Translations under genes and position numbers: made by a program
Source: Octopus sinensis
Taxonomy: Eukaryota
Assembly (NCBI RefSeq): GCF_006345805.1
Contig: NC_043019.1
Location: forward strand, 30,503,360-30,567,359
Direction: 5' to 3'
DNA length: 64,000 nt
Shown: positions 22,134-52,851 of the stretch, in pieces
How positions within the stretch are numbered: position 1 is the stretch's first letter
Layout: each line of letters begins with the position of its first letter
Notes under the pieces: generated by a model
Seen by the model: only the letters and a program-made list of their open reading frames with translations
The model's database searches: none
Told to the model about the DNA's origin: nothing

Positions 22134-22232
22134 ATGCTAGAAATAACAGTACTGGTCTCTATTGTGGTGCTAGCCAGCATTGTCTTCTTGGCGTTTCAGT
22201 GCTCCTGCTTTGGAAAATCTACAAGATTCAAA
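22134..22232 (+). CDS. LMTK: Coding exon 1: signal-anchor/TM segment [33 protein letters not shown]
   Basis: ATG at 22134 has an in-frame TGA upstream (22125-22127). Donor AAA|GTAAGT at 22233; upstream acceptor TTTTCAG ends at 22084. Resembles AATK LACLCCKKGGIGFK|EFE including the intron position. Confidence 0.85.
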
Positions 22233-23116
22233 GTAAGTTGCTTTTTCAACTTTTTGGGAAATGGTCTTATGAATACTGAATGTTTTATACTCTTTTACTC
22301 TTTTACTTGTTTCAGTCATTTGACTGCAGCCATGCTGGAGCACCGCCTTTAGTCGAGCAAATTGACCCCCAGGACTTATTCTTTGGAAGCCTAGTACTTA
22401 TTCTATCTGTCTCTTTTGCTGAACCGCTAAGTTACAGGGGACATAAACACACCAGCATCGGTTGTCAAGTGATGTTGGGGGGACAAACACAGACACATAA
22501 ACTCACACATATATATACATATACATATATACATATATATGACGGGCTTCTTTTCAGTTTCCGTCTACCAAATCCACTCACAAGGCTTTGGTCGGCCCGA
22601 GGCTATAGTAGAAGACACTTGCCCAAGATGCCACGCAGTGGGACTGAACCCGGAACCATGTGATTGGTAAGCAAGCTACTTACCACACAGCCACTCCTGT
22701 GCCTATAGATTAGAAAAAAAAAATGTTCAAGGCAAAGGTTCTCATTTTAAAAGATCTTTGTGATACAGGTGCGGGCATGGCTGTGTGGTGAAGAAGCTCG
22801 CTTTACCACCACTGCACGACATCTTGGGCAAGTGTCTTCTACTATAGCCCCAGGCTTGTGCATGAATTAGTTAAACGAAAACTGTGTGGAAGCCCATTGT
22901 ATATACGTGTGTGTTTGTGTTATTCCCAACCATTGCTGTCAACCAATATTGGTTTGTTTCTGTCCCTGTAACTTAGCAGTTCAGCAAAAGAGACCAATAG
23001 AATAAGTAACATGCTTAAAAAATAAGCAGGGGGTGGGGTCGATTTGTTTGACTAAACATGTTAGGGCAGTGCCCCAGCATGGTCACAGTCCAATGACTGA
23101 AGCATAAAAGATAATG

Positions 23117-23158
<42 letters not shown>

Positions 23159-25236
23159 GTGATATATGCCCTGTAACATAGCAGTCTGATAAATAGAGTT
23201 TAATAAAATAAGTATCAGATCAGAACAAGTACCGGGGTCATTAAAATTATTGACGGCATTATCACATGATCATGGATCACATGACAATGGCCAAAACTAA
23301 TTTTTTTTATCTTTTCTTCCCCCAGAGTTTTGAAGAGGATGCAGAAAATCCAAGAGAACGTTCTTTGGAAGGTTGCGTTGGCCCCGAAGTGGACAATACA
23401 TCGTTGGTGAATTTTGAGCCGTTACCTGACATTTTATCAAAAGCAATACCTGCTACAACAGCCTTGAGACCAAGAATCACTTGTATTGCCACTGACAACA
23501 ATGAACCCAACTCAAGAATTGTCTGTAAGTTTACACTTTATGGAATATTACTTATTTTAGTCACAAACAAAAATATGTTTTATCAGACTAGGAAAGGTCT
23601 GTGTCTAAGACTGCTGTTAGATCACTAAGACCAGTGTATGAGGACGAAAGAAATCGTAGCTTTTTAGTTGATGAAGTAGGAAACAGTACATATCTATATA
23701 TATATAAAGCTGAAGTTGTCTGTGTGTGTGTGTGTGGCAGGTTTGGTAGCCGTCAACTAACACTATCTCCTCCGAGACTCTGCAGCGCAAGTTGACCAAA
23801 ATTGAGAGTATGATAGAAGAAGGCTTGCTCTTCATTCCATAGAAGAAAAAATTCAAATCGGACCATATTAACACCAAAAATTATTTACATCAAAAAGATG
23901 CTTTTTTTCTATGTAAATCCCTATTTTTTACGATTTTTTGACTGCTGTGTTGCCATTTTCCGGTGTATTTTAACCAGAAAAATGTTCACTTAAAGTGAAT
24001 AACAAGCTACATAATGCAAAATTCCAATTCTAATGGGTCGAAAAGAAAACAAATCCGGGCAACGCCGGGCTATACTGCTAGTTAATATATAAAACTATCC
24101 TGAGTCCAGAGAGCTCTTCCAAGTGTTTGTACCTGTGGCTTCCACTAAAAGTACCCAAGGGCTAAGCATTGGTGCCAAACTAGCAAGCCATGCTTGTATC
24201 GAAAAGCAAGTTTGAAATGACAATGATAGGCCTCATCTCTCTTCCCCTGCCCCCAGTTAGAATCTTCCTAAGTCTGATTTTGTATTCTGTCACTTGATAG
24301 GATCAATAGAATAAGAGGCGGGCAAACCCAGTGGGATTTGAACTGAGAAATGTAAAGAGCCACCAAATAGCTATGCAGTTTTTAGTCTGCTTTTATAATG
24401 CTTCGGCTACTAGTATACCATTAACAATAATAATGATTTTGTATGTTTCAAAAAACCAGAAATTTTAGAGTTGGGATACAGTCAATGATATTGATAATTA
24501 TTTTTACAATACTTTATTTTTATCAGTCCCAGAAGGATGAAAGACAAAATCAACTTCAATGGCATTTGAACTCAGAATGCAAAGATCCAGAACAAATACC
24601 ACAAGGCATTTCGTCTGCTGCTTTAACAATTCTTCCAATCCACTGCCCACGAAGATGATTTCTTACATAGGCACAAGGCTAGAAATTGATGAGGGGGAAA
24701 AAGTTGATTATATCTCTCCCAACCAGAACTTAACCAATACTTATTTTGTTTGGTCCCAGAAGTATGAAAACCAAAGTTGAACCAGGCTGGATTTGAACTC
24801 AGATCATAAAGAGCTAGAACAAACATTACAATGTATGCTGTTTGTTCAACACTCAAGTGGTACAGCTAAAATAATAATTTCTAATTTGGCAAAGGAAGAC
24901 AGGTGTATAGAGGGTGGAGCATACAAGCATAATTGATGAATTAAACTCTCTGTATAAATATAAGGACATAACAGAACACAATTAAGTATGGTAAGGTATC
25001 TCGTCCATACACTATCCACCACAGTTTACAATAATTACTTTTACTGACTGCAAGGACTTAAAAGGACAGAATGTAACAAAGTGGCTGTGTGGTAAGTAGC
25101 TTGCTTACGAACCACATGGTTCCGGGTTCAGTCCCACTGCATGGCACCTTGGGCAAGTGTCTTCTACTATAGCCTCGGGCCGACCAAAGTCTTGTGGGTG
25201 GATTTGGTAGACAGAAACTGAAAGAAGCCCGTCGTA

Positions 25237-25278
<42 letters not shown>

Positions 25279-28200
25279 TGTGTGTGCTTGTGTGTCTGTG
25301 TTTGTCCCCCTAGCATTGCTTGACAACCGATGCTGGTGTGTTTATGTTCCCGTCACTTAGCGGTTCGGCAAAAGAGACCGATAAAATAAGTACTAAGCTT
25401 ACAAAGAATAAGTCCTGGGGTCGAGTTGCTTGATTTAAGGCGGTGCTCCAGCATGGCCGCAGTCAAATGACTGAAACAAGTAAAAGAGTAAAGAGTAAGA
25501 AAAATGGGTGTCAAGGGCAGATAATAATAATTTTTATTCCTTGGATGGAAAAGGCGGAATTCTTGAAGTACTGCAATGTAATACTAGGCCACCTCATAGT
25601 AGAGCTAGAGTAGCTCCTAAGTCTCCACCTAGTTCTAAAATAAGCTTGCTATCTGATATCGTTGAATATGGGTCTTTATCAGATAATAAGCTGATAAAAA
25701 AAAGATACTATACTTTGGTTTTAGTCTTCATCTTCACATGACAAATTTAATTTATCTGCAGCATGAAGTCAGCTTATCTGTTCCCTTTTGAAGGAAAAAA
25801 AAGAAGCCCCCCTTTTTTAATTCTTTATTTATACAATTATTTTGTTCTTATCTCTGTTCTCTGTCTCATTGCAGCCTTCCAACAAGCATTCCCTCGTAAA
25901 CAACTCACCTATCTCTCTGAGATGGGGATGGGGTGGTTTGGCCAGGTAAGAAAATCTATATACTCTTTTCTGTTGTTTTCTTTTTTTTTTTTCAATCTTA
26001 CAGAGGTCCATCTTCTGATTGCTGACCAATAATGCCCAGAGGTCGATCTTTCCAAAGATTGATCTGTGCAAGTTTAAGCTGGATATGAACTGTAGTGAGC
26101 TTGCTTCTCCACCACGAAACTGAGACAGATTACAGAGTCTATAAACACTATCTCTCACTCTCCTTCCCCCTCTCTCTCTCTATCTCTCTCTTTCAAATTA
26201 ATAAGGTGAGGAAGTAAAAGAACTGGGATATATACATTACATCTCTGTATGTATACACACACACATATGTTCTTCCATTGAAGCCTTGTGAGTGGATTTG
26301 GTAGACAGAAACTGAAAGAAGCCCGTCATATATATGTATATATATGTGTGTCTGTGTGTGTGTGTGTGTATATGTTTGTGTGTCTGTATTTGTCCCCCCA
26401 ACATCGCTTGACAACCAATGCTGGTGTGTTTACGTCCCCGTAACTTAGCGGTTTGGCAAAAGAGACCGATAGAATAAGTACTAGGCTTACAAAGAATAAG
26501 TCCTGGGGTCAATTTGATCGATTAAAGGCAGTGCTCCAGCATGGCCTCAGTCAAATGACTGAAACAAGTAAAAGAGTAAAAGAGTAAAGAGTATATATAC
26601 ACACCTCTCCCCTGGACTGGGCACTGGTTCATCACAGGATTACTCCCTTTTGCCAGCTGAGTGGACTGGAGCAATGTGAAATGAAGTGTTTTGCTCAAGA
26701 ATACATTGCTTGGTCCAGGAATTGAACAAAACCACTATCTTTGTGCTTGAGAAGACATGTCAGGCTAAGTGAAATCGTAATTGTGGTCAGTGCTGGTGAC
26801 ATGTAAAAGGCATCCGGGCTAATGACACATAAAGGGCACCAATGCCTGTAACACATAAAAAAAAAGCACATGTACCTGTTGCACATAAATGGCAATTGTG
26901 CCAGTGACGTGTAAAAGGTACCCGTACCTGTGACACATAAATTGCACTCATGCTGGTGACACGTAGAGGGCACCCATGCCAGTAACATGTAAAGGGCACC
27001 TGTGCCAGTGATGTGTAAAATGCACCTGTGCTGATGACACGTAGAGGGCACTCACGCCAGTGACTCATAAAGGGCACCTGTGCCAGTGGTACGTTGAAGG
27101 TACCTGTGCCAGTGACACATAGAAGGCACCCAGCACACTCTGTGGAATGGCTGGCATTAGGAAGGGCATCCAGCTTCAGAAGCCAACCCAAAACAGACTG
27201 GAATCTGGTGCAGCTCTCCAGCTTACCCGTTCCAATCAAACTGTTTAACCAATGCTAACATGGAAAATGGATGTGAAATGATGATGATGATGATGATGAC
27301 GACGACTACAACGATAACGACGATGATTTCAACACCCTAACTACTTAGCCATGCACCTCCACTTTCAGACCAAAGTCCTGGTTCAAATGCTTGCAATGGA
27401 ATGGATTTCACGAAAGGCACCCAAGGACCAGATAACAGATAGGTAACATCATCATCATCATTATCGTTTAATGTCTGCTTTCCATGCTGGCATGGTTTGG
27501 ACGGTTTGACTGAGGACTGGCAAGCCAGTAGGCTGCACCAGGCTCCAATCTGATCTGGCAAGGTTTCTACAGCTGGATGCCCTTCCTAATGCCAACCACT
27601 CCGAGAGTGTAGTGGATGCTTTTTACATGCCACCAGCACAGGAGCCAGTCAGGCGGCACCAACTGAAAAACTACAGAAAAACTACAGAAAAATTTCTGTC
27701 CTTTGTAAGTATGTAATAAAATGATGTGTTTATGTTCATTTTTATCAACCACAAAACGTTTGAACATCAGACCACCTGTCAGGTACATGAAGGTCAAAAT
27801 GACCTATCATATAGATTAGAATCTGTTTAAAGGTAACCTCAAGATTAAGATAAAACTATGTCTGTAATAACTGTTTATACCCACCCCTCACACAAAATCA
27901 TAACTCATTTTGTTACTTTATCTCTTCAATTGTTCTCATAAGTTTCTTCTGTTTTACTACGTGCCATCTTCAATGACTGGCAATTAAACTCTGTAATTGT
28001 TTGTCTATCAAGGTCACTATATATATATATATTTTTTATAACGCTTCATTGTTGTATCACCGATATTATTTTTATCAGTGAACCAACTAACCATTGCTCT
28101 CTCTCCCTCTTATGAAAAGATAAAGGAGAACACTTTTACCTTTCAATAAAACTTTCACCTTTGGGTATTCAGCTGCTGATTTTTGTCAGGTCTATCCAAT

Positions 28201-31200
28201 TCAACTTCCCATTTTCCTCACTGTTGGCCTCTGCTTCTCAAGATCTTCTCTTAAGATCAAGTTTGTCAGTTTTCTTATTCGCCTGCTCTGACTCATCTTC
28301 TGGGCATGTTTAACCCCCCATCATTTCAATGATTTTGTGAATTCAAAAATGTCATTAATTTAGATTCATTTGAAACAATTAACCTGAAAGAGACTCTAAT
28401 CAAAGTGCTAGCTACCTGACCTGCTAGAAATAGCAGTCTGTCTGTCTGTCTCTCACTCACTCGCTCACACACACACACACATGCAATTAATTCAGTGAGG
28501 GACTTTGTGATTATGGAGCTAACCCAAGGCTAAATGACATCAACAATAGGTCTGCTAAATGAGGTTTGACCTGGAGCTAAACAACAACAAAAACTGAAGC
28601 CATAGTCACCACAAGACAGCAAGGGAGCTCCTACATACTCACTCAACTACCAAGAAATGGCAGCCAAAACTCCTTCAAATTACACCCCATCATCTTAAAA
28701 AAAAAAAGAGAGAACAAAAAGGGAAGGACATTTTGAAAATGTAATCAGAGATAAAGCATGTCTGAATAAAAGACGAAACATCTGTGATAATAGGTCTGTA
28801 GTGATGCCTGGTTCCAGACGCTATTTTGGGATTTTCATCCACACATGCGCAGAGATTAGAGCCTTCCGGAAGGCCTGCTGAAAGCCCCTTATACACATGT
28901 GCAGTCATCGGCAGCAACTAGGCTTGACTGCCATTCTCTCTCTCTTCACCTCGGCTGCCGACCGAGCGGGAGGCAACTTGACCAGCTCCGTGTGGCTGGA
29001 ATTCTGAAGGCGATCCACGACTTTGGCAAATCTGTGAAGAATGCCTTCACAATTGTGATTAAACCGACTTAATAATAACAACAACAACAATCTTTCTACA
29101 ATAGGAACAAGACCTAATATATTTGGGGAGGGGACTATTCGATTACATTGATCCCAGTAATTGACTGATACTTATTTTGTTGATCCCTAAAAGATGAAAG
29201 GCAAATTTGACTTCGGGAGAATTTGAACTCAGAGCGCGAAGACAGTTGAAATGCTGCTAATTATTTAGTCTGGCATGTTAATGATTCAGCCAACTTCCTG
29301 CCTTAATGATAATGATTATAATAATAATGATAATGATGATCTTTCTCTGTTTTATTGCTGATATTGGCTAAGCTGTTTTAACCATTGTTAATCTGTAAAC
29401 TCTTTTTCATTTTGTAAAGGTTGTCCAAGGAATTGCTGATAATGTTTTGGTTGGAGTTAGACAAAGTAATGTTGTTGTTCAAGTACTTCGAGATGATGCA
29501 AGCGCTCTTGAAATGCAGAAGTTCCTCCAAGAAGTTGCTGGTTATCGGTAAGTTTTGGTATAACTATACTAATAACCTGTTCTTAGAACTCAATTTACAC
29601 ATGCTTCAGTCAAGGCGGCACTGGCATCAGTCACGTTCGGATGGTGCTTTTTACATGCCATCGGCAAGGGGTATATATATATATATATATGTATATATCT
29701 TATAATAATTCTGCTTGTCACTTTGTTACTTAGCCCATCCATAACGCTTTCACATGATTAGTTGAGGGGGAGGGAGAGGTGGTGGTGAGTGAAATGCGTA
29801 ATTTTTTTCTTTTTTTAACCAAGTTTTCTTTCTCTGTCACTTTCATCTGTAATGCTTTCATATGATTAATTGAAGGGAAAAACGAAGAGTGAAAGAGAAA
29901 GTAGAGAGAAAAAAGGGTATGGCAAAGAGTGAGAGAGAAAGAGGAAGAGTATTGTGTATTAAGTCTATAAAATTGTGCATAAAGTATATGAAATGTATAT
30001 ATAAAGTGCATTTAGTATATATTCCAATTTCCTTCACTTTTCAATGATTAGCAAATAAGCAACTGTCTTGTGATATAGACACAACACAGGATATACTTTC
30101 TGGTTTTTTGGATAAAATTTTCAGAAATAACCCAATAAATTTACCATTAATTCTGTGAAATATTCACAGGACCCCTACTATATATATTATATATATTTAT
30201 ATACTCATATGTATATATATATATGTATGTGTGTGTATGTGTTCATGTGTCTGTGTTTGTCCACCCACAACATCGCTTGACAACCGATGCTGGTGTGTTT
30301 ACGTCCCCATCACTTAGCGGTTCGGCAAAAGAGACCGATACAATAAGTACTGGACTTACAAAGAATAAGTCCCGGGATCGAGTTGCTCGATTAAAGGCGG
30401 TGCTCCAGCATGGCCACAGTCAAATGACTGAAACAAATAAAAGAGTAAAAGAGAGTATATGCGTATTATATGCTGCTTGTTTGTATTGAGTACTTCATTT
30501 TTCATTGTGCACTCAAACATATGTGTGTGTATGCATACATTCAGATGCAGTGAAGACATATGGCTTAGTGGTTAGCATCTTTGGCTCATGAGTGTGAGGT
30601 TGTGAGCTTGATTCTTGGTGGCACATTGTCACATCGTTCCAGTCCACTCATTTAGCAAAAATGAGTCGCACTTCTAGTTCAAAGGCCCAGCCTTGTCACA
30701 CTCTGTGTCATGCTGAATCTCCCTGAGAATTATGTTAAGGGCACATCTGACTGTGGAGTGCTCAGCCACTTGCACGTTAATTGCACGAACAGGCTGTTCC
30801 ACTAATCAAATCAAATGGAACTCTCGTCATTGTTGTTTGTTCCTTCTCGAGCCATGCCTGGCTCATAAGAGCCGGTTTCCTGGTTTCCTTGGCATATAGG
30901 TTCCCCACCTGGCCAGGACACCGGTCTGTCACAGGTGAGCTGCAAGATGCAGGAGGAAAGAGTGAGAGAAAGTTGTGGCGAAACAGTCAGCAGAAGCGTG
31001 GAACTTAGGTGTTTCGCTCCTAAACACACATATCGCCCGGTCTGAGATTCGAACCCGCGATCCCTCGACCGCGAGTCCGCTGCTCTAACCACTAGGCCAT
31101 GTGCCTCCACTCTCGTCATTGTAACCAACAGGGTACCAGTTAGTTACATACAGATGCACCCACATGTACACAAACACAAATATATATTTTCATTTGTAAT

Positions 31201-32756
31201 GTATTCTCTCTTCCTCTCTATTTCCACAGGATATTAGATCATCCTAACGTACTCCGACTACTTGGAATGTGTACTGAAGCCATCCCATTCCTCATACTCT
31301 TTGAATATTTCCCACTGGTTTGTATATCCAATCATTTGTTTGCTTTTTCTCGCGATTTATTATTAACATTATTGATTAGTCATCATCATCATCATCATCA
31401 TCATCATTGTTTAACGTCTGTTTTCCATGCTAGCATGGGTTGGACGGTTTTGACTGAGGGCTGGCAACCAGATGGCTGCACCAGGCTCCAGTCTTGATCT
31501 GGCAGTGTTTCTACAGCTGGATGCCCTTCCTAATGCCAACCACTCCGAGAGTGTAGTGGGTGCTTTTTACGTGCCACCGGCACAGGTGCCAGTCAGGCGG
31601 TACTGGCAATGACCTCGCTCGAATCTTTTACACATGCCACTGACACAGGTACCAGTGAAGCGATGTTGGTAACGATCATGCTCGAATGTTGCCCTTTTTA
31701 CGTACCACGGTATATATATATATACATTGTGTCCGTAAAGTCATGGTTGGGTTTCAAAACTGTTTATCGATGTAACTTGCAACACTCCACATTTCATATC
31801 CATGTTGAATAAGAGACCAACTAATAAAGTTTACATAGAGTTTAGTGCAATTTCGATGTGGCTTCCATTTGTTGTCCTACACACATCTAATCAATATTCC
31901 TGTTGGATGAATGAAGCAAACCTTACTGACACACTGTGTGTGTGTGTGTGTGTGTGCGTGTAATGTGTGTATGTATATGTATACACACACACACACATAC
32001 AAGGGGGTGCTGAAATGTTCGTAGTTTTGGGCAAAAGAAAATACAGGAGGATCGGTTAGCTATGACTTTATTCAACATATCTCCCTCCCTGCTTGACACA
32101 CGTATTGCAGTGGCCCTTCAGATTTTTGAAGTCCATATAAAAGAACTCAGAAGATTGGGCCTCCAGCAAGGCCTTTTATGGTACCCTTAAAACCAGGATC
32201 TTTTCTGCACCCCTCATATATATATATATATATGTATATATACTGCAAATTTAGGGTGAATACTTGATAAATGTAAGTACCTGTATACGCCAGCTAGTGG
32301 CAGAGGTGAGAGGGAATATATCAAATAAAATCAAAAACAGAACACAAAGGGTGTCGCGGTACACATGTTTCAAGCTTTATAAACGACCTGTATATATATA
32401 TGTATATATGAGAAGAAAATGGATGTAATAACAAGGGGAAACTCGTGGTTTTCGCTGGTATGCCTTTGATTTAATTAGATAACAAAGAAGAAGGAAGCAA
32501 TGATAAAGGTAGCATTTACAATCGTTTCGATTTACTAGTTTTAGTAAATCTCTTCAGAATAGATTGATACATCGGTTAGGATGCGAAAATAATTGATACA
32601 TATGTGTTGGTAACAGAGGCGAAGTTAGTAAGTCTTACTTTAAATTTTGTTCTTGAGCTGGTAATTTCGCTGGGGAGAGGTTTCATTGTAGAAGATTGGT
32701 TAGTTTCGTTGGGCAATTAGAGCGGGGTGAATATTATTTTTTTGGAACCCTACACC

Positions 32757-36281: not shown

Positions 36282-36656
36282 TTGTGTGTGTGTTTGACAA
36301 CCGATGCTGGTGTGTTTACGACCCCTGTAACTTAGCGGTTCGGCAAAAGTGACCGACAGAATAAGTACTAAACTTACAAAGAATAAGTCCTGGGGTCGAT
36401 TTGCTTGACTAAAGGCGGTGCTCCAGCATGGCCACAGTCAAATGACTGAAACCAGTAAAAGAGAGATGACCTTATGCTTAACTTTAAAAGAAATTGTCTT
36501 TAAAATTCATTTTCCTTTTCCACAATTTTTTACTTGTAGTGATCTTGCTCTGCGTAATTGTTTGGTAACCAATGATCTGTCTGTAAAAGTTGGTGATTAT
36601 GGCCTGGCTGAAGATATATATAAGGTCAGTATTTTATATATATTTATGAATAGGAT

Positions 36657-36697
<41 letters not shown>

Positions 36698-38574
36698 CTG
36701 CAATCTGGTTTAACCCTTTCGCATTTAAACTGTCCAAGTTCGGCCAAAATATTCTACCTGTTTTGTTCAAACTTGCCAGATCTTGCCTCTCGCACCTACC
36801 CAACAATATCAGTCCAAAATTAAGCAATCACATCATTGAGATCTTGAAGCTATGAAATAATGCATGATTAATTGAAAACAATTGTTACTAAATAAATAAG
36901 CTTTACATTTATTTGACAGAGTAACCTGAAAGCTGAAGGGTTAACATCCTGGTTGTCATCATTTCACTTCATTCTCATTGGACAAAAATTATGCACATCA
37001 TAGCTTTCCCTTCTTACCCCTCTCCTCCACCACCACCACCACACATATGCATGCACACACATGCACGCACACACATTAAGTATCTCATGCTTTATGTCCT
37101 ATATAAATAAAAATATCAAACAATCAAAACCATCAGAAAGTTATTTACACTGCAAACATTTGAATGTAGGTCAACATACCAAACAGGTCATTGTTATAGT
37201 GGGGTCACCACTTGTAAGGTCATCAACGCTCATCAAAAGGTATATTTAATTCATAATAATATAGCTTCCTACTGTCACATGCTACATGATGGATCTAGAA
37301 GTTTATTTTTCGACATAATTACAAGGGAATGGATAGCTGCTGTTTTTTTTTTATATTTAGCCCCCAGGTCAGCCCTTATCAAATAGACCTATCATCAAAT
37401 ACATTCCAACTGTGACCATTCCATCTTTTTATTGTGTGCAGAGGAACACAATAAATAAAAAATAAAAGATTAAAAATATATTTATATATATGTATGTTCA
37501 CACATGATCAGTTTCCATGAACCAAATTCCCTCATAAGTTGCTGGCCTGGGGTTATATATAGCAAAAGACACTTGCCTCAGATGCTGCACAGTGGGACTG
37601 AACCCAAAGCCATATGGTTGCAAAGCAATCTTCTTAACCACAAAATCATACATGTACTCACATCTATCTATGTGTTGTTAAATTTTTTGTTTGTTAGTAG
37701 ACCAGGTCTTTATATGTCTGGTATAATTCTTTATGTGGAGGCGCAATGGCCCAGTGGTTAGGGCAGCGGACTCGCGGTCGGAGGATCGTGGTTTCGATTC
37801 CCAGACCGGGCGTTCTGTGTGTTTATTGAGTGAAAACACCTAAAAAGCTCCATGAGGCTCCGGCAGGGGATGGTGGCGACCCCTGTTGTACTCTTTTGCC
37901 ACAACTTTCTCTCACTCTCTCTTCCTGTTTCTTGAGTAACACTGCGATGGACTGGTGTCCCGTCCAGCTGGGGGGAACACATACGCCACAAAAACCAGGA
38001 AACCGAGCCCATGAGCCTGGCTAGGCTTGAAAAGGGCGAACGTTTATCGTTTATAATTCTTTATACATCATTTCAACAACAATTGTATAAATATATTTAA
38101 AATGTCTATTGTAGGAGGATTATTATGATACAGGATGTGACTTGTTGCCAGTCCGGTGGATGGCTCCTGAGACTCTTACTTTACAAAAAGGAGTTTGGCG
38201 TACAAAGGCTTTTACACCTCAGGCCAATATTTGGTAAGCATCTGAGTTCAAGTCTTTTACAGAATCTTCTTGTTTTTTTTTTTCTTTCTAAACCAACCAT
38301 GTCCAGCCCAGATATTCTACACATTTTATGTTCAAACTGGCCAGATTTGGCCTCTCACACTTAGCACAAAATGTCAATCTAAAAATATACAATCACATCA
38401 TTTGAAATCTTGAAGCTGTGAGATAATTGTATGATTAATTCAAAACAATTTGAATAAATAAGCATTATATTTAACAGAGTAATCTGAATGCTAAAGAACT
38501 AATTTTTTGCTTTGTCAAAAGAAATTTTCTCAATTTGAAAATTATTATTTCTATTTAACAAGCATGTTGTTGTT

Positions 38575-38621
<47 letters not shown>

Positions 38622-41600
38622 TTCAGTGAAATTACATCAATCATGAATCAAAGCCATATTACAAATGTAGCTTTCTGGGATCTTATCACCTTATTTTTCT
38701 GGATACTGTGTGTTAATAAGCATAAGTAAGCAGTGTAAAGGCATGTGACCTAGTGGTTGGGGTGTTGCACTTATGATTACAAGATCGTGGTTTCAATTCC
38801 TAGACTGGCAGTGTGTTGTGCTCTTGAGCAAAACACTTCATTTCATGTTATTGCATTTGTCTCAGTTGCAAATGGGTAACCCTGCACCAAACTGGTATTC
38901 TGTTATGGAGGATTGTTGGTTTGCTTCCCTAGCCAGTGGGGTGGCTTCATTCGAAATCTACAACAATGTGAGGAAGTGCATTGTGATCAGCAGTGTATAA
39001 CAAAATCTGATAGTCTGGTCAATACAGTGTTGCATTCAGGTAAGCTGTGTATGGTTTAAAGAAGCTAATACCATATTGTTTTTGTGTTTTGTTTTTTCAT
39101 AACCCCTAGGTCTTATGGTGTGAGCATGTGGGAATTGATACAGTTTGGCCGACAGCCCTATCATTGGTTGACTGATGAACAAGTCTTGGACTGTGTTGTT
39201 CTAAAGAAGACAGAAGTTCTGCCAGTTCCAAATTATCCTGAAAACCAGAAGATCAACATGTAAGTTCTACATAACGCTGACTATGCTCTGTAAAATTCTA
39301 TGCTTGTTTTTTTACTCCCTGTCATCTCTGATGCAGTTGAATGATCAAATAACATTCCAGCCATGACCATCACATCCTTCTCTTGAGTTTTGAGTATTTA
39401 ATACTAAATTGTCTAATGTTGTTGATGTTGTTGTTTAGCCCTAAGCCATCCCTGATCCAGCTGACTAATGATCAAAGAAGTTCCAGTTGTGATCATTCTG
39501 TTGTAGGCATGGCTATGTGATAAGAAGGTTGCTTCCCAATCACATGGTTCTGGGTTCATTCCCATTGCGTGGCACCTTGGGCAAGTATCTTTTACTATAG
39601 CCTCGGGCTGACCAAGGCCTGATGAGTGGGTTTGGTAAATGGAAACTGAAAGAAGCCAATTGTGTGTGTGTGTATATATACTCTTTTACTTGTTTCAGTC
39701 ATTTGAGTGTGGCCATGCTGGAGCACCACCTTTAGTCGAGCAAATTGACCCTAGGACTTATTCTTTGTAAGCCTAATACTTATTCTATCAGTCTCTTTTG
39801 CTGAACCGCTAAGTTACAGGGATGTAAACACACCAGCATTGGTTGTCAAGCGATGTTGGGGGACAAACACAGCCACACAAACACACACACACATACATAT
39901 ATACATGCATACGACAGGCTTCTTTCAGTTTCCGTCTACTAAATCTTTGGTCAGCACAAGGCTATTGTAGAAGACACTTGCCCAAGGTGCCACGCAGTGG
40001 GACTGAACCCGGAACCATGTGGTTGGTAAGCAAGCTACTTACCACACAGCCACTCCTACACCTATATATATATATGGCTGATCTCTAATTGTGGAGGAAA
40101 TTTGTGTAAAAGGTAGACCCATGAAGACATGGGGCAAAGTTGTGAGAAGGGATCTTCAGATGCTGAGTCTCACTGAGGAAATGACAAAGGACCAGGTGTT
40201 GTGGCAATTTGCTGTACTTGAGAAGACGTGTCAAGCTAAGTAAAATCGCAGTCATCCATACTTGTAAGTCTGTCCTTTACAGGTGCTGGTGCCACATGAA
40301 ATGCACTCATGCCAGTGTTGCACATGTGCACCCGTGCCACGGGGGAGTAAAAGAGAGATGGTGGTGGATGTGTGTCAGGACATATCTTCATGGTTTAGTG
40401 GGGGCGGGTGAATATGGGTGAAGTGATATGGAGGATTGGACTGGGTGAGTGAGCAAGGTGGACAGAGGGTCAAGTTTCAGAAGAATGTGAGGTGAGATGG
40501 TTAGAGATTGGATAGAGGTCTCTGTAATCTGAATGCTAAAAGGTTAAAACAGTTTTTAAAATTTTACACCTGATGCGTACCAGTAATTACCCTGCAGACT
40601 GCACTAGTCATTCTTTTGTTTGATCTCCAGTACACCACTAAGTCAAAAAGAGATAGGGAGTCATTGTAATAGGATTAAAGTGCAAGGGATTTAGCTGCTA
40701 TTTCTAGCAGATTGATCAACCATGTAAATGCTACCATCTTGGTTTTGTGTATTGTTTTAACAATATTTGTTTTAATTAGAATTTGAGAAATTCTTTGACT
40801 TCTCTTTAATTTTTGTCGTTTGTCTTATTCAGATATGAACTGATGAAAATGTGTTGGCAGAAAGCAGAACAACGTCCTACAATTGAGGAATTACATGGTC
40901 ATCTGTTGGATCTGGAGATCTCTTTGAAAAACATGGAAGAATCAGATTTTGAAAGCAAATGGAATATTCTGAGTCCAATTGAAATCGAAAGCCCAAGTCA
41001 TGGAATTGCCCCAGAATCCATGGAGATAGCGACAGATGCTCTGGAACTGTTTGTAGCTGAGACTGAAGCTCCTGTTGCTAATGGTAACACAGGAGATGTA
41101 GTTGTTAATATTCCCATCGAAGTTCCATTAGAAAATGGTCTGACAATTCCACTGGCTAGCCGTCACCTCTTGACCTTTAATGATAGTGATTTGGTGACTG
41201 ACATCAATACGGAAACTGAAGAGAAGCTTTTAGCTCAGCTAGAGTCTGAAACAAAGAATGCACCAAACAGTGAAACTATGCTTGATCTTGATCCTGAGTT
41301 TGAGTTGGAACCAAAAAGTCCAGCAAAAGCCATGGCAAAGCAGGGTAAAGTTGACCATTCTGGTCATGATGCTGTTGATAGTGTTGATGGATCCAGTCCA
41401 ATCAGTGCCGGCAAAATGAAAAAGGCGAACAGCACTGAAGAAGATGGAATGCCCTCCCCAATACCACATGTGTCTCCCAATACTTCACCTTCTCACTCAG
41501 ATGCTGAGCTGCAGCGTTCGTCAGAGCGTATCCAAGATCTGAGCTCAATCCATTCTTTTAGTGATGAAAGTGCCAATGAATCGTCTCCTGAAATCTCTGA

Positions 41601-42285
41601 AGAAATGGCTGACATCTATTTTCAAAGACGTCCAAATTCAAGCGGCTTACGTCGCTCCAATCTGATAGCAATGCCTTTAGCGCCAATACCAGAAAATGGT
41701 ATACCTGTAGACAGTTTTAGTGGGACTTTTAATAAATCTCGGCTAGTAAAATGCAATTCTGATGACTCTCCGTCACAACAAGACTCTCCGTCACAACAAG
41801 ACTCTTACGAATGGGATGAACTAGTTGGTGGACAGCTTGTGGGTAAAAGCTGTGATAATGTACCCTCACCCCGTCGAAGCTTGGACTTTGACTGGTCCAT
41901 GGATTCGAACCCCAAACCAGTTACCCACAATAAAAGGCGAAGACATACGTTGGCATCACTCCCAGATCTAGGTAAAAACAGTAATTTTTCTTTTGGTAAA
42001 TCAGATAGTTGTTTTTCCACGTCCGGAACTGGACTTAATGCTTGTTCCATTGCATCGGAGATCTTGACCAGTCGGGTCATCTCTCCAATTACTAAAAAAA
42101 CACCACCACGTCGAACATTTTATACAATTTCCTCTCTCAATGATATTGATCTGGACATTGGTGATGATGACGATGGACTTGAAATGGACAATTTTGATAT
42201 TCCACGTAGCCTTCATTTAAAATATTCCACCAGTCAAGATCTCACAACAGTTGGCAATTCAGACACATCAAAGGTATTTATTTAA
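22134..42285 (+). CDS. LMTK: LMTK/AATK-family (lemur tail) membrane-anchored kinase, 10 coding exons, 841 aa: join(22134..22232,23326..23524,25875..25945,29420..29547,31230..31317,34721..34854,36540..36624,38115..38233,39110..39259,40833..42285)
   Basis: Manually spliced exons total 2526 nt in one open frame, and every intron is GT..AG with matching phase. The protein has an N-terminal hydrophobic anchor followed by CSC, then [38 protein letters not shown] and CWQ...RPT, and a long acidic Ser/Pro-rich tail. DLALRN, DYG, the non-Arg HxD and the anchor-plus-tail layout match vertebrate LMTK1-3. The single symbol LMTK is used because the paralog cannot be assigned. Confidence 0.93.
23326..23524 (+). 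CDS. LMTK: Coding exon 2 (juxtamembrane, SFEEDAEN...NSRIV)
   Basis: Polypyrimidine tract + CCCAG acceptor; open phase-0 frame; donor T|GTAAGT at 23525 (phase 1). Confidence 0.85.
23693..24081 (+). mobile_element. Non-autonomous Helitron (389 bp)
   Basis: 5' TC(TATATATATAAAG), 3' CTAG, subterminal GC hairpin CCGG-GCAACG-CCGG, inserted between A and T with no TSD. Confidence 0.82.
25875..25945 (+). CDS. LMTK: Coding exon 3 (glycine-rich loop, [19 protein letters not shown])
   Basis: TTGCAG acceptor, CAG|GTAAGA donor, GxGxFG motif. Confidence 0.92.
29420..29547 (+). CDS. LMTK: Coding exon 4 (beta2-beta3-alphaC; [43 protein letters not shown])
   Basis: TTTGTAAAG acceptor, CG|GTAAGT donor. Aligns to AATK QVVVKELQASASVQEQMQFLEEVQPYR. 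This frame is absent from the supplied ORF track. Confidence 0.9.
31230..31317 (+). CDS. LMTK: Coding exon 5 ([29 protein letters not shown])
   Basis: TTTCCACAG acceptor (phase 2), CTG|GTTTGT donor; kinase subdomains IV-V. Confidence 0.92.
31400..31690 (-). mobile_element. (GAT)n-tailed retroposon family D (GGCATTAGGAAGGGCATCCAG core)
   Basis: Recurrent block abutting (CAT)n tracts. Copies near 3365-3600, 15360-15600, 21165-21315, 26740-27290, 27455-27660, 56725-57000 and 57075-57320. Confidence 0.7.
31723..31938. mobile_element. Decayed Tc1/mariner-type MITE
   Basis: Imperfect TIRs TACATTGTGTCCGTAAAGT / CCTTACTGACACACTGT in TA-rich flanks. Confidence 0.5.
32513..32561 (-). ncRNA. Minimal type I hammerhead ribozyme motif
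   Basis: Minus strand: UAUU-CUGAAGA-GAUUUACUA(AAAC)UAGUAAAUC-GAAA-C(GAUU)GUA-AAUG. Perfect 9-bp stem II and intact core. Confidence 0.7.
32947..33050 (-). ncRNA. Type I hammerhead, long-loop family copy 2
   Basis: Minus strand: CCAUAACAGCUAUCU-CUGACGA-GCACAGGGUU...AACCCUGUGU-GAAA-CC(GAUU)GA-UA-AGAUCGGCUGUAAUGG. About 15-bp stem I, 10-bp stem II, one C.A mismatch in stem III. Confidence 0.75.
34721..34854 (+). CDS. LMTK: Coding exon 6 (GDLKNYL...[15 protein letters not shown])
   Basis: TATTATAG acceptor, TG|GTAAGT donor; subdomain VIa. Confidence 0.93.
34944..35177. repeat. Foldback (imperfect palindromic) element with arms of about 110 bp
   Basis: GGAATCAAGTACCCTGACCTCCTAATA pairs with TATTAGGAGGTCAGGGTACTTGATTCC, and pairing extends to CACGATTTTCACTA / TAGTGAAAATCATG. 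Confidence 0.85.
36540..36624 (+). CDS. LMTK: Coding exon 7 ([29 protein letters not shown])
   Basis: CTTGTAG acceptor, AAG|GTCAGT donor; catalytic loop and DYG motif. Confidence 0.95.
37737..38040 (+). mobile_element. tRNA-derived SINE family C (GGAGGCGCAATGGCCCAGTGGTTAG head)
   Basis: tRNA-like head with GGTTTCGATTCCC B box followed by a non-tRNA body. Copies include 9420-9678 (-), 13718-13990 (+), 16150-16490 (+), 19690-19986 (-), 30846-31108 (-), 47265-47540 (+) and 62577-62820 (+). Confidence 0.85.
38115..38233 (+). CDS. LMTK: Coding exon 8 ([40 protein letters not shown])
   Basis: ATTGTAG acceptor, TG|GTAAGC donor; activation segment with PxRWMAPE. Confidence 0.93.
39110..39259 (+). 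CDS. LMTK: Coding exon 9 ([26 protein letters not shown]...QKIN)
   Basis: CCCCTAG acceptor, AT|GTAAGT donor; subdomains IX-X. Confidence 0.93.
40833..42285 (+). CDS. LMTK: Coding exon 10 (subdomain [11 protein letters not shown]...RPT plus acidic, Ser/Pro-rich tail)
   Basis: TTATTCAG acceptor; 490-codon ORF in the track. Contains CDK-type (S/T)Px(K/R/H) sites (SPAK, SPSH twice, SPRR, TPPR). Ends at TAA 42283-42285, or is spliced at AAG|GTATTT 42273/42274. Confidence 0.92.
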
Positions 42286-42544
42286 CAATAGACATTTCCA
42301 TTTATTTACCATGTTATTTCTTTGTTATTCCCTTTTTTTAATTGGCAAATATTTCGTTAGATTTTTTTTTTGGTGCTGAGTACAAATAACCAGGTATAGT
42401 TTGTAGTGAAATGGTATCTATAGTACTGGATTGTATTATCTTGATTTAATTATATTTTGATTTTTTGTTTAACATCTTAAATACATCAGATATTACCCTA
42501 GAAGATTGAGTATTGGCGTAGATATAACACATATTGTTCCATAG

Positions 42545-43830
42545 ATACATTGTATATTGCTATAGATATGCTACATCTTGGTCTAGATACTGTATATTGT
42601 CATAAATACACTCTACATTGCCATACATACACTGCGTGTCACCATAGATGCACTACATGCCACCATAGACACACTGCATGTTGCCATAGACACACTGCAT
42701 GTTGCCAGAGAGACACTGCATGTTGCAAAGATATACTGCATGTTGCCATAGACACTCTGTATGTTGCCATAGAGACACTGCATATTGCAAAGATATACTG
42801 CATGTTGCCATAGACACTCTGCATGTTGCCATAGAGACACTGCATGTTGCAAAGATATACTGCATGTTGCCATAGACACTCTGCATGTTGCCATAGACAC
42901 TCTGCATGTTGCCATAGACACTCTGCATGTTGTCATAGATACAGTGTGTTTCTGTAGATACACTGTTACATCGTGTTTTGCTTTAGGCACATTGCATGTT
43001 ACCATGGATACACTTCATATTTCCTTAGACACACTTCATGTTTCCTTAGACACATTTCATGTTTCCATAGACACACTACATGTTGCAATAGACACACTGC
43101 ATGTTGCTATAGACAAGCTGCATGTTATCACACATACTCTGCATGTTGATGCAAATACATTACATCTTGCTTCAGTTACTTTACAGTTGACATAACTATA
43201 AAAGCTGATTTAGTTACAGTACAGTTTGCCAGAGATATATTAATACATAACTTGTCTTACATATACCATATCTTGCTTTACATATGCCATATCTTGCCTT
43301 ACATATACTATATCTTTCCTTACATATACCATATCTTGCCTTACATATACCATATCTTGTCTTACATATGCCATATCTTGCCTTACATATACCACATCTT
43401 GCCTTACATACACCATATCTTGCCTTACATACACCATATCTTGCCTTACATACACTATATCTTGCTCTTACATACACTGTATCTTGCCTTACATATACCA
43501 TATCTTGCCTTACATATACCACATCTTGCCTTACATATAGCACATCTTGTCTTACATACACTATATCTTGCCCTTACATACACTGTATCTTGTCTTACAT
43601 ATGCCATATCTTGCCTTACATATACCACATCTTGCCTTACATATACCATATCTTGCCTTACATACACTATATCTTGCCCTTACATACACTGTATCTTGCC
43701 TTACATATGCCATATCTTGCCTTACATATACCATATCTTGCCTTACATACACTATATCTTGCTTTACATATACCATATCTAGCTTTACATATACCATATC
43801 TTGCTTTACATACACTGCATCTTGCCTTAG
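42545..43830. repeat. 21-bp minisatellite array with two related unit types
   Basis: ATGTTGCCATAGACACACTGC type at 42545-43150 and ATCTTGCCTTACATACACTGT type at 43250-43830; produces the 7-residue periodic ORFs. Confidence 0.92.
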
Positions 43831-52689: not shown

Positions 52690-52851
52690 GATTTAACTGA
52701 CCTACCATTTGACGAAGAATCCGTTCCATCATCACCAACATCACTACCATCAACATCAGAAGCATTTTGTGAAGACTTATTGGAGAGAATTTCATCTATA
52801 GAATCTGGATCAGGAAGTCCATTAGAATCATTGAAACAACGAGACAGCTGA
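52690..52851 (+). CDS. LMTK: Probable alternative last coding exon (DLTDLPFDEESVPSSPTSLPSTSEAFCEDLLERISSIESGSGSPLESLKQRDS*)
   Basis: ATTTTGTAG acceptor. Only phase 0 is open, matching the phase-0 donor at 42274. Acidic Ser/Pro composition resembles the tail. Donor TAG|GTGAGG at 52861, 9 nt after the stop. Confidence 0.62.
   Translation, partial: DLTDLPFDEESVPSSPTSLPSTSEAFCEDLLERISSIESGSGSPLESLKQRDS

What the first reader, a model, noticed from the sequence alone, without database searches (positions are those of the whole stretch)
29468..29491. LMTK-family kinase lacks the invariant beta3 lysine (VVVQ): candidate pseudokinase
Seen in sequence: exon 4 reads [13 protein letters not shown] where AATK has AQVVVKELQASAS, and codon 29480-29482 is CAA (Gln). 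There is no compensating Lys in the G-loop or beta2 ([11 protein letters not shown]), so a WNK-type rescue is not evident. The G-loop, alphaC Glu (FLQEV), HCD..N and DYG are intact and the frame is open over 10 exons, so this is not a decayed pseudogene. Established: the VAIK lysine positions ATP phosphates and its loss usually abolishes phosphotransfer. A-to-I editing could give Arg (CGA) but cannot restore Lys. Inference: a scaffold or allosteric lemur-tail pseudokinase, or an editing-tunable site.
Basis: partly seen in the sequence, partly recalled or inferred. Interest (0 to 1): 0.78.

Follow-up and report, generated by a model that had tools for sequence, protein, structure and literature searches.

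The report
Cephalopod LMTK kinase without catalytic lysine
Octopuses, cuttlefish and their relatives have all replaced the ATP-anchoring lysine with glutamine in their only detectable lemur-tail (LMTK) kinase, yet have kept the rest of the active site almost unchanged, so the enzyme is probably crippled but has a conserved, still unknown job.

Summary
Codon 29480-29482 is CAA (Gln144) in exon 4 of an 11-exon, fully open LMTK-family gene (window 22134-52851, + strand). It aligns without gaps to the beta3 Lys of LMTK3.

It is not an assembly error, a rare allele or a decaying gene. The same Gln is encoded in the Octopus bimaculoides and Argonauta genomes (the latter as CAG). It is also present in RNA-seq assemblies of a cuttlefish and a second decapodiform. 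All 35 other mollusc orthologues have Lys.

The kinase domain is under strong purifying selection (dN/dS about 0.05). It has diverged no further from outgroup orthologues than the Lys-bearing mollusc domains have. The G-loop, alphaC Glu, HCD..N and DYG motifs are invariant.

Six further cephalopod-specific fixed changes accompany K-to-Q. They include gatekeeper Leu-to-Phe and hinge Ala-to-Phe.

Loss of the beta3 Lys recurs in other protostome LMTKs: Capitella (Gln), and a springtail and hemipterans (Arg). It usually comes with an aromatic gatekeeper.

By the sequence definition this is a predicted pseudokinase. Whether it is truly inactive is untested, and the intact remainder of the site keeps an atypical active kinase plausible.

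I found no alternative exon supplying a Lys and no support for RNA editing at this codon.

The parts
22134..22232 (+). Exon 1: start codon and N-terminal hydrophobic membrane anchor with a Cys cluster ([33 protein letters not shown])
   Evidence: 100% tblastn match to residues 1-33 of the O. bimaculoides orthologue; gtaagt donor
23326..23524 (+). Exon 2: juxtamembrane segment (SFEEDAEN...FEPLPDIL...[12 protein letters not shown]), conserved across cephalopods
   Evidence: AG/GT boundaries and phase fit; conservation
25875..25945 (+). Exon 3: start of the kinase domain, glycine-rich loop GMGWFGQ
29420..29547 (+). Exon 4: beta2, beta3 and alphaC. Gln144 codon CAA at 29480-29482 in place of the beta3 Lys. 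Cephalopod-specific Met155 (29513-15) and Lys157 (29519-21). AlphaC Glu161 (29531-33).
31230..31317 (+). Exon 5: beta4, beta5 and hinge. Cephalopod-specific Met179 (31267-69), gatekeeper Phe190 (31300-02) and hinge Phe193 (31309-11).
   Evidence: gatekeeper position taken from LMTK3 Met239 (PMC7673765)
34721..34854 (+). Exon 6: alphaD and alphaE up to the His of HCD ([12 protein letters not shown])
36540..36624 (+). Exon 7: catalytic loop (H)CDLALRN with Asp241 and Asn246, and DYG with Asp259
38115..38233 (+). Exon 8: activation loop (EDYYDTG), P+1 loop PVRWMAPE and an LMTK-type insert
   Evidence: invariant in five cephalopods
39110..39259 (+). Exon 9: alphaF to alphaH of the C-lobe
40833..42273 (+). 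Exon 10: end of the kinase domain, the post-kinase F-E-x-x-W motif and a roughly 450-aa tail with no Pfam domain but several conserved blocks
52690..52851 (+). Alternative last exon (isoform X1-type C-terminus DLTDLP...EAFCEDLLERISSIESG...KQRDS, then stop)
   Evidence: 79% tblastn match to O. bimaculoides isoform X1 residues 834-885; AG acceptor and stop codon

Best explanation
The window carries the octopus orthologue of the lemur-tail (Lmr/LMTK) kinases. The protein is 835-885 residues long. It has an N-terminal membrane anchor, a tyrosine-kinase-like domain and a disordered tail.

Shown:
- One A-to-C change turned the beta3 Lys codon (AAR) into Gln (CAR) in a cephalopod ancestor. This happened after cephalopods split from the other mollusc classes sampled and before octopods and decapodiforms split.
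- The Gln has been kept by purifying selection ever since.
- It is accompanied by a small set of fixed changes around the ATP pocket: two Gln-to-Met, gatekeeper Leu-to-Phe and hinge Ala-to-Phe.

Inferred:
- Without the lysine that positions the ATP alpha/beta phosphates and pairs with the alphaC Glu, ordinary phosphotransfer is lost or greatly weakened.
- The bulky gatekeeper holds the hydrophobic spine together without the Lys-Glu lock.
- The domain now works mainly as a membrane-tethered module that depends on conformation, and possibly on bound nucleotide. It recruits partners through the kinase fold, the conserved YY activation loop and conserved tail motifs.
For: Family: LMTK3 (6SEQ) is the best solved relative, 240 bits against 183 for the insulin receptor, and Gln aligns to its Lys. 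The orthologues recovered are LMTK-named mollusc proteins.

Fixation:
- O. bimaculoides, Argonauta hians, a cuttlefish-type transcript (99% identical to the Acanthosepion pharaonis protein named LMTK2) and a second decapodiform all read [11 protein letters not shown].
- The codons are CAA, CAA, CAG, CAA and CAA, with synonymous differences in the flanking codons.
- All 35 non-cephalopod molluscs have Lys. The chiton has AAG in the homologous exon.

Constraint: kinase-domain dN/dS is 0.059 (window vs O. bimaculoides) and 0.047 (between the two decapodiforms), against about 0.15 in the tail.

Pocket remodelling: there are seven cephalopod-specific fixed substitutions. Five lie in beta3, beta4, gatekeeper-1, gatekeeper and hinge.

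Precedent in the family:
- The kinase-dead LMTK3 construct includes K193A (together with D295A and D313A) (PMC7673765).
- An aromatic gatekeeper co-occurs with a broken Lys-Glu pair in cephalopods, the springtail Orchesella, hemipterans, P0337 and vertebrate LMTK2.

No rescue:
- No Lys in the G-loop or beta2.
- No alternative beta3-type exon in the flanking introns.
- No Lys-bearing cephalopod paralogue among hits down to 295 bits.
Against: - Inactivity is not demonstrated by anything here.
- The catalytic Asp, the Asn, the DYG Asp, the alphaC Glu, the G-loop glycines and the YY activation loop are invariant in all five cephalopods.
- The domain is no more diverged from arthropod and vertebrate outgroups than Lys-bearing mollusc domains are: 43.7% identity against 42.2% and 40.3%. 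That is not what relaxed catalytic constraint predicts.
- Vertebrate LMTK2 lacks the Glu partner of this Lys and is still reported to phosphorylate substrates (PMC10401967).
- The published LMTK3 dead mutant is a triple mutant, so the effect of the Lys alone is not known for this family.
- The PP1-docking K-x-V-S-F motif of vertebrate, arthropod and Mytilus tails is missing in cephalopods. The best-known LMTK scaffold function therefore cannot simply be assumed.
- The gatekeeper covariation has exceptions: Capitella has Gln with Met, and P0118 has Lys with Phe.
Confidence: 0.55

Rival explanations
1. The protein is still a working Ser/Thr kinase with a non-canonical ATP site. Gln144 hydrogen-bonds the phosphates, or another basic residue takes over. 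One candidate is the cephalopod-specific Lys157, one helical turn before the alphaC Glu. The remodelled hydrophobic pocket compensates for the lost Lys.
For: - All other catalytic residues and the activation loop have been invariant since the octopod-decapodiform split, with dN/dS about 0.05.
- There is no rate acceleration relative to Lys-bearing orthologues.
- Lys157 is fixed in cephalopods and absent (0 of 35) in other molluscs.
- LMTK2 lacks the alphaC Glu yet is reported active (PMC10401967).
- The beta3 Lys has been lost repeatedly in protostome LMTKs (Capitella Gln, Orchesella and hemipterans Arg). Each time HxD..N and DYG were retained.
Against: - The beta3 Lys is nearly invariant in active kinases (established knowledge).
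- The only well-known rescue, in WNK, places a Lys in beta2, and none is present here.
- A Lys or Arg at the alphaC-4 position also occurs in Lys-bearing LMTKs (Allacma, LMTK3), so it is not specifically tied to the loss.
- I know of no example of a Gln at this position supporting efficient catalysis (my own knowledge).
Confidence: 0.3
2. The CAA codon is an ADAR recoding site, and the protein switches between Gln and Arg forms.
For: CAA-to-CIA would read as Arg. Cephalopods recode neural transcripts extensively (for example PMC8382921). Arg occupies this position in Orchesella and hemipteran LMTKs.
Against: - All 16 cluster members that cover the site read Gln. These include more than 12 distinct RNA-seq-assembled sequences from two decapodiform lineages.
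- Codons flanking the site differ synonymously between species, so no conserved RNA structure is evident.
- The local fold has z = -0.55.
- No LMTK entry appears in the held supplementary text of a coleoid recoding study.
- Assemblies report only the majority base, so low-level editing is not excluded.
Confidence: 0.04
3. A different exon or isoform supplies a canonical VxxK beta3 strand.
For: Introns here are long (2.5-3.5 kb on either side of exon 4) and could hide a mutually exclusive exon.
Against: - No open AG...GT segment of the right phase with a beta3-like motif and kinase similarity exists between 25949 and 31224.
- The O. bimaculoides isoforms X1 and X2 in the protein collection differ only at the C-terminus.
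- Full-length decapodiform transcripts splice exons 3, 4 and 5 exactly as modelled.
Confidence: 0.02
4. The Gln is an assembly error or rare allele, or the gene is a decaying pseudogene.
For: None found.
Against: - The same residue appears in three independent genome sequences (this window, O. bimaculoides, Argonauta) and in at least seven independent RNA-seq runs.
- The frame is open over 11 exons.
- dN/dS is about 0.05.
Confidence: 0.01

Closest known systems
Vertebrate LMTK1 (AATK), LMTK2 and LMTK3 (Lmr family, IRKL clade of tyrosine-kinase-like domains)
   Same: - Best sequence match.
- GxGWFGxV loop, a DYG motif, and a catalytic loop of the form H-x-D-L-A-x-R-N without the usual Arg.
- AlphaE histidines, an insert after APE, and a post-kinase F-E-x-x-W motif.
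- N-terminal membrane anchor and a domain-free tail.
   Different: - Beta3 Lys is replaced by Gln.
- Gatekeeper is Phe (Met in LMTK1 and LMTK3, Phe in LMTK2) and the hinge residue is Phe (Cys in vertebrates).
- The tail is only about 450-500 aa.
- It lacks the K-x-V-S-F...VYLFDQE PP1-docking block.
Vertebrate LMTK2 specifically
   Same: The Lys-Glu salt bridge is broken, there by loss of the alphaC Glu (PMC10401967), and the gatekeeper is Phe.
   Different: LMTK2 keeps the Lys and is reported to be catalytically active. Here it is the Lys that is missing.
KSR1/KSR2 (beta3 Lys replaced by Arg, otherwise near-canonical; scaffold with disputed residual activity). From my own knowledge.
   Same: A single substitution at the beta3 Lys with the rest of the catalytic machinery retained and conserved. 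Function is thought to be largely scaffolding or allosteric.
   Different: A different kinase group (TKL, Raf-like), Arg rather than Gln, and well-defined partners. No partners are known here.
[quoted passage not shown] The residue details are from my own knowledge.
   Same: A tyrosine-kinase-fold protein at the membrane whose beta3 Lys is, as I recall, replaced by Gln.
   Different: EphB6 has also lost the HRD Asp and the DFG motif. The cephalopod LMTK has lost only the Lys.
WNK kinases (catalytic Lys moved to beta2). From my own knowledge.
   Same: No Lys at the canonical beta3 position.
   Different: WNK has a compensating Lys in the glycine-rich loop. None is present here.
Other Lys-less protostome LMTK-like proteins found here: Capitella teleta CAPTEDRAFT_228532 (Gln), P0337 (Gln), Orchesella dallaii (Arg), Rhodnius prolixus and P0290 (Arg)
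   Same: Same family and same position. HxD..N and DYG are retained, and the gatekeeper is aromatic in most.
   Different: These are independent lineages. Capitella has a Met gatekeeper, and P0337 has also lost the alphaC Glu.

Membership tests
Lmr/LMTK kinase family | The kinase domain is more similar to LMTKs than to other tyrosine-kinase-like families | tested here: met
   LMTK3 6SEQ scores 240 bits; insulin receptor/IGF1R score about 183 and TrkA 165. The orthologue set is made up of LMTK-named proteins.
Lmr/LMTK kinase family | DYG instead of DFG | tested here: met
   GDYGL at 36592-36606. All cephalopods have DYG. The motif is described for LMTK3 in PMC7673765.
Lmr/LMTK kinase family | Catalytic loop H-x-D-L-A-x-R-N with a non-Arg residue after His (HSD in vertebrates) | tested here: met
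   HCDLALRN.
Lmr/LMTK kinase family | Serine/threonine-type alphaE histidine regained (LMTK3 His260; PMC8662651) | tested here: met
   [12 protein letters not shown] aligns to LMTK3 GLAHLHSHNYVH. Both His residues at chain positions 258 and 260 are present.
Lmr/LMTK kinase family | Trp-containing glycine loop GxGWFGxV | tested here: met
   GMGWFGQV. A Gln after the third Gly is the protostome norm.
Lmr/LMTK kinase family | Post-kinase F-[DE]-x-x-W motif | tested here: met
   [11 protein letters not shown]. The motif is present from vertebrates to arthropods and molluscs.
Lmr/LMTK kinase family | N-terminal membrane anchor and a long domain-free C-terminal tail | tested here: met
   Exon 1 encodes a hydrophobic stretch of about 19 residues followed by CSC. 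This was read directly; no transmembrane predictor was run. The tail has no Pfam hit. It is shorter than in vertebrates.
Lmr/LMTK kinase family | K/E/D/D catalytic signature (LMTK3 Lys193, Glu210, Asp295, Asp313; PMC7673765) | tested here: not met
   Lys is replaced by Gln144. Glu161, Asp241 and Asp259 are present.
Lmr/LMTK kinase family | C-terminal PP1-docking K-x-V-S-F motif followed by VYLFDQE-like block | tested here: not met
   Present in human AATK, mouse LMTK3, fish LMTK2, Strigamia, Schistocerca and Mytilus. Absent from octopus, Argonauta, cuttlefish and the second decapodiform; the nearest block is [15 protein letters not shown].
Lmr/LMTK kinase family | Ser/Thr phosphotransfer activity | not testable with these tools
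   Needs recombinant protein.
Pseudokinase (sequence definition) | Lacks at least one of the beta3 Lys, the HRD Asp or the DFG Asp | tested here: met
   The beta3 Lys is absent in all five cephalopod orthologues.
Pseudokinase (functional definition) | No phosphotransfer; nucleotide-binding class | not testable with these tools
   Needs thermal-shift and kinase assays.
WNK-type relocated-lysine kinase | Compensating Lys in beta2 or the glycine-rich loop | tested here: not met
   No Lys in kinase-domain residues 1-48. The only basic residue there is Arg in the beta2-beta3 loop, and other molluscs share it.
ADAR recoding site | A/G discordance between genome and transcripts at the site | tested here: inconclusive
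   Every assembled transcript has A, giving Gln. Read-level frequencies are not available.
ADAR recoding site | Stable, conserved double-stranded RNA around the site | tested here: not met
   The 181-nt local fold has z = -0.55. Flanking synonymous sites vary between species. Long-range pairing was not tested.

The most novel reading that the evidence does not exclude
In the Lmr/LMTK family the beta3-Lys/alphaC-Glu lock is dispensable for the function that selection preserves. It has been broken independently at least four or five times: in coleoid cephalopods, Capitella, a springtail, hemipterans and vertebrate LMTK2. Each time the rest of the catalytic site is retained, and usually the gatekeeper is aromatic. 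On this reading the cephalopod protein is not a dead scaffold. It would be either a kinase with a genuinely non-canonical ATP-phosphate contact, or an ATP-independent, permanently 'spine-assembled' conformational switch. Cephalopods would then run their nervous-system LMTK pathway entirely on this form, because no Lys-bearing paralogue was found.
Probability: 0.25. Interest if true: 0.7.

Novelty: new variant of a known kind. Interest (0 to 1): 0.52.

Why it matters
LMTKs regulate endosomal traffic, phosphatase targeting and ion-transporter control in vertebrate neurons. Yet it is still argued how much of that needs their kinase activity.

Here a whole animal class with large brains has kept its single LMTK orthologue under tight constraint after deleting the catalytic lysine. 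That gives a natural 'kinase-dead knock-in' hundreds of millions of years old.

If the protein is inactive, the conserved functions of LMTKs must be non-catalytic. The co-evolved gatekeeper and hinge changes would then show how a kinase fold is stabilised without the Lys-Glu lock. If the protein is active, it would be a new way of building an ATP site.

Either outcome is directly testable with a recombinant domain and the Q144K revertant.

On a practical level, several mollusc orthologues are misnamed in public records: MAP3K21-like, insulin-like receptor, abl-1-like, erbB-2-like and serine-rich adhesin.

Tried and rejected
- **Exon probe.** It served only to find exons. Boundaries were then set from the sequence and checked against O. 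bimaculoides.
- **First protein searches.** The first protein search returned no cephalopod or mollusc orthologue. The second returned only the chiton P0113 among molluscs. I noticed that the hit lists stopped at about 1.75 times the longest query sequence. A padded alignment lifted that limit and recovered the orthologues.
- From the same restriction I assumed structure prediction would too, and ran no structure prediction. The tool returns no coordinates, so it could not have shown pocket geometry anyway.
- **Metagenome scan.** A scan with the exon 3-5 peptide found nothing.
- **Alternative exon.** The search for a beta3-type exon in the introns was negative.
- **Editing.** I found no Arg variants, no local RNA structure, and no LMTK entry in the held supplements of PMC8382921. 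PMC5499236 and PMC6997932 are not held.
- **Literature.** Searches for LMTK together with pseudokinase, invertebrates or cephalopods found no description of this substitution. One search was badly framed and uninformative.
- **Compensating basic residue.** Lys157, at alphaC-4, is cephalopod-specific among molluscs. Lys-bearing LMTKs elsewhere also have a basic residue there, so it is only a candidate.
- **PP1 docking.** The motif as evidence for a scaffold role was not found in cephalopods.
- **Nautilus.** No orthologue was recovered, so the change cannot be placed before or after the nautiloid-coleoid split.
Full report
**What is at the coordinates.** Window 29468-29491 reads AGT AAT GTT GTT GTT CAA GTA CTT (S N V V V Q V L). 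Codon 29480-29482 is CAA. It lies in an exon with canonical boundaries (29420-29547, ag|GTT...TATCG|gtaagt). That exon encodes beta2, beta3 and alphaC of a protein kinase domain.

**Locating the exons.** A tblastn probe placed eight kinase-domain exons on the + strand. I set their boundaries by hand from the sequence. The spliced product is open with AG/GT at every junction.

**Gene model.** Comparison with the Octopus bimaculoides protein found later completed the model:
- exon 1, 22134-22232: ATG and the hydrophobic anchor [33 protein letters not shown]
- exon 2, 23326-23524
- exon 3, 25875-25945
- exon 4, 29420-29547
- exon 5, 31230-31317
- exon 6, 34721-34854
- exon 7, 36540-36624
- exon 8, 38115-38233
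- exon 9, 39110-39259
- exon 10, 40833-42273
- alternative last exon, 52690-52851

**Family.**
- The spliced kinase domain scores 225 bits on Pfam PK_Tyr_Ser-Thr.
- Its best solved relative is LMTK3 (6SEQ) at 240 bits, against about 183 for insulin receptor/IGF1R. The Gln aligns without gaps to the Lys of VVVKEL.
- It has the family's DYG motif and an H-x-D-L-A-x-R-N catalytic loop without the usual Arg (HCDLALRN). It also has the alphaE histidines (PMC8662651), the Trp-containing GxGWFGxV loop and a post-kinase F-E-x-x-W motif. That last motif is conserved from vertebrates to arthropods.
- The tail has no Pfam domain.
- In LMTK3 the K/E/D/D signature is Lys193/Glu210/Asp295/Asp313 and the gatekeeper is Met239. 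The published kinase-dead construct is the triple mutant K193A/D295A/D313A (PMC7673765).

**Finding the orthologues.** The first protein search gave only vertebrate and springtail LMTKs of 513 residues or fewer. A second search with an invertebrate profile reached 778 residues. This suggested a length limit of about 1.75 times the longest query sequence. An alignment containing a padded copy of the window protein lifted it. The third search returned:
- O. bimaculoides LOC106870410 (96% identical)
- Argonauta hians (76%)
- two sets of RNA-seq-assembled proteins (61% and 57%)
- about 35 bivalve, gastropod and chiton orthologues

Of the two transcript sets, one is 99-100% identical to the Acanthosepion (Sepia) pharaonis protein named LMTK2. 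It is therefore cuttlefish. The other is a second decapodiform, 82% identical to it. In the tables my labels 'squid' and 'cuttle' stand for these two, respectively.

**Is the Gln real?**
- All cephalopod sequences read S[NK]V[VI]VQVLRDDAS, with [16 protein letters not shown] and DYG.
- At DNA level the codon is CAA in the window, in the O. bimaculoides genome and in both decapodiform transcripts. It is CAG in the Argonauta genome.
- The neighbouring Val, Leu and Arg codons differ synonymously among species.
- All 35 non-cephalopod molluscs have Lys. The chiton has AAG in the homologous exon, with the same boundaries.
- The change is therefore a single first-position A-to-C substitution. It was fixed after cephalopods separated from the other sampled mollusc classes and before octopods and decapodiforms diverged. 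From my own knowledge that split is of the order of 250-300 million years old.
- No Nautilus sequence was recovered, so I cannot place the change relative to the nautiloid-coleoid split.
- Assembly error, a rare allele and pseudogene decay are excluded.

**Selection.**
- Nei-Gojobori estimates for the 277-codon kinase domain give dN/dS of 0.059 (window vs O. bimaculoides, dS 0.118) and 0.047 (between the two decapodiforms). The tail gives about 0.15-0.17.
- The G-loop, alphaC Glu, catalytic Asp and Asn, DYG, the EDYY activation loop and PVRWMAPE are invariant in all five species.
- Identity to arthropod and vertebrate outgroups is 43.7% for cephalopods. For Lys-bearing molluscs it is 42.2% and 40.3%. 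Losing the Lys did not speed up evolution of the domain.

**What changed together with the Lys.** Only seven kinase-domain positions are fixed in cephalopods and differ from a conserved state in other molluscs:

| Position | Change | Element |
|---|---|---|
| Val, in IADNVLVGV | Ile to Val | beta2-beta3 loop |
| Gln144 | Lys to Gln | beta3 |
| Met155 | Gln to Met | before alphaC |
| Met179 | Gln to Met | beta4 |
| Leu189 | Ile to Leu | gatekeeper-1 |
| Phe190 | Leu to Phe | gatekeeper |
| Phe193 | Ala/Ser/Pro to Phe | hinge |

These changes make the surroundings of the nucleotide pocket more hydrophobic and bulkier. In addition, Lys157 lies four residues before the alphaC Glu. It is fixed in cephalopods and never basic in other molluscs. 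A basic residue there also occurs in Lys-bearing LMTKs, namely Allacma and LMTK3.

**A wider pattern.**
- The beta3 Lys is also missing in Capitella teleta (Gln, CAG in the genome) and in an unidentified JGI sequence, P0337 (Gln).
- It is Arg in Orchesella dallaii, Rhodnius prolixus and P0290.
- All of these keep HxD..N and DYG.
- Among 143 LMTK-like sequences, an aromatic gatekeeper occurs in 21 of 23 without Lys and in 5 of 120 with Lys. That count is inflated by relatedness.
- By lineage, four of five Lys-less lineages have an aromatic gatekeeper. The exception is Capitella, with Met.
- Four of the five Lys-bearing sequences with a Phe gatekeeper are vertebrate LMTK2. LMTK2 has lost the alphaC Glu partner instead (PMC10401967).
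- The remaining case, P0118, is an unidentified RNA-seq-assembled sequence with an intact pair. Its hinge region (LLLFEYCP) closely resembles that of P0290.
- A broken Lys-Glu pair thus tends to travel with a bulky gatekeeper. From established work on gatekeeper mutations, a bulky gatekeeper stabilises the regulatory spine. That last step is inference, not something tested here.

**Alternatives tested.**
- No alternative beta3-type exon exists in the introns between 25949 and 31224.
- The recorded O. bimaculoides isoforms differ only at the C-terminus.
- Full-length decapodiform transcripts use the same exon 3-4-5 junctions.
- No Lys lies in the G-loop or beta2, so there is no WNK-type rescue.
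- No Lys-bearing cephalopod paralogue appeared among hits down to 295 bits.
- For RNA editing, all 16 cluster members that cover the site read Gln. Flanking synonymous sites are not conserved. The local fold is ordinary, z = -0.55. A held supplement of a coleoid recoding study has no LMTK entry. Low-level editing cannot be excluded from assemblies.

**Mechanism.** The beta3 Lys positions the ATP alpha and beta phosphates and pairs with the alphaC Glu (established knowledge). Its loss therefore most likely removes or greatly weakens ordinary phosphotransfer. By the sequence definition the protein is a predicted pseudokinase. I put about 0.55 on a crippled domain that may still bind nucleotide. 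On that reading it acts as a membrane-tethered conformational or scaffolding module, using the kinase fold, the conserved YY loop and conserved tail blocks. Examples of those blocks are [55 protein letters not shown] and [15 protein letters not shown].

The intact and slowly evolving remainder of the site, and the LMTK2 precedent, keep an atypical active kinase at about 0.3. The classical LMTK scaffold partner cannot be assumed. The K-x-V-S-F...VYLFDQE PP1-docking block is present in vertebrate, Strigamia, Schistocerca and Mytilus tails but absent in cephalopods.

**Novelty and verdict.** The gene is present in public annotation as 'uncharacterized protein', 'LMTK2' or 'MAP3K21-like'. I found no description of the substitution or of its fixation in cephalopods.

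It is a lineage-wide, Lys-less variant of a known kinase family. Loss of the catalytic Lys within an otherwise intact kinase domain is itself a known kind of event, as in KSR.

Its functional reading remains open. I score interest as moderate, at 0.52.

Noticed in passing
window 42535-43148, 43246-43841, 44865-45776: Three large tandem-repeat arrays lie in the intron between exon 10 and the alternative last exon. Their units are 21 nt, 21 nt and 13 nt, with roughly 21-61 copies. They create long spurious ORFs on both strands.
   Followed up: partly
window, e.g. 3284-3736 (+), 5307-5618 (+), 22280-22660 (+), 25061-25309 (-), 39828-40085 (+), 53306-53845 (-): Many copies of one interspersed repeat occur in both orientations. 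Its translation contains RHLPKVP(R/H/C/Y)SGTEPGTMW(L/F)[10 protein letters not shown]. It looks like a SINE-type element scattered through the introns and flanks.
   Followed up: no
window 42273/42274 (exon 10 donor); P0344, P0224: An RNA-seq-assembled octopus protein (P0344) ends in ...SDTSKVFI. That is exactly what reading through the exon 10 donor into the intron gives in the window. O. bimaculoides isoform X2 ends ...SDTSKNK instead. So at least three C-termini exist: read-through, a short exon, and the 52690-52851 exon.
   Followed up: partly
Related proteins P0117 (locus L010), P0337, P0002, P0116, P0290: The beta3 Lys of LMTK-like kinases has been lost independently in an annelid (Gln), in a springtail and hemipterans (Arg), and in an unidentified sequence (Gln, which has also lost the alphaC Glu). 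In each case HxD..N and DYG are kept.
   Followed up: partly
Kinase-domain alignment, window codons 31300-31302 and 31309-31311: An aromatic gatekeeper goes with a broken Lys-Glu pair across the family. This includes vertebrate LMTK2, which lost the Glu. The exceptions are Capitella and P0118. The sequence-level Fisher test is strongly significant but is not corrected for phylogeny.
   Followed up: partly
Tails of P0343, P0225, P0226, P0227 compared with P0289, P0330, P0309, P0257, P0267, P0235: The PP1-docking block K-x-V-S-F followed by VYLFDQE/VYEYP is shared by vertebrate, myriapod, locust and mussel LMTKs. It is absent from the cephalopod tails.
   Followed up: partly
Hit list: Mollusc LMTK orthologues carry misleading public names. 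Examples are 'MAP3K21-like' (Argonauta), 'serine-rich adhesin for platelets' (Patella, Haliotis), 'insulin-like receptor' (Ylistrum, Ruditapes), 'abl-1-like' (Mizuhopecten) and 'erbB-2-like' (Physella).
   Followed up: no
Whole window vs locus L008: The window is not O. bimaculoides itself. The protein is 96% identical and kinase-domain dS is 0.118, so it comes from a congeneric or closely related octopus.
   Followed up: no
Tool behaviour: the search for homologous proteins returned no hit longer than about 1.75 times the longest query sequence. Full-length eukaryotic orthologues appeared only after the query alignment was padded with a long row.
   Followed up: yes
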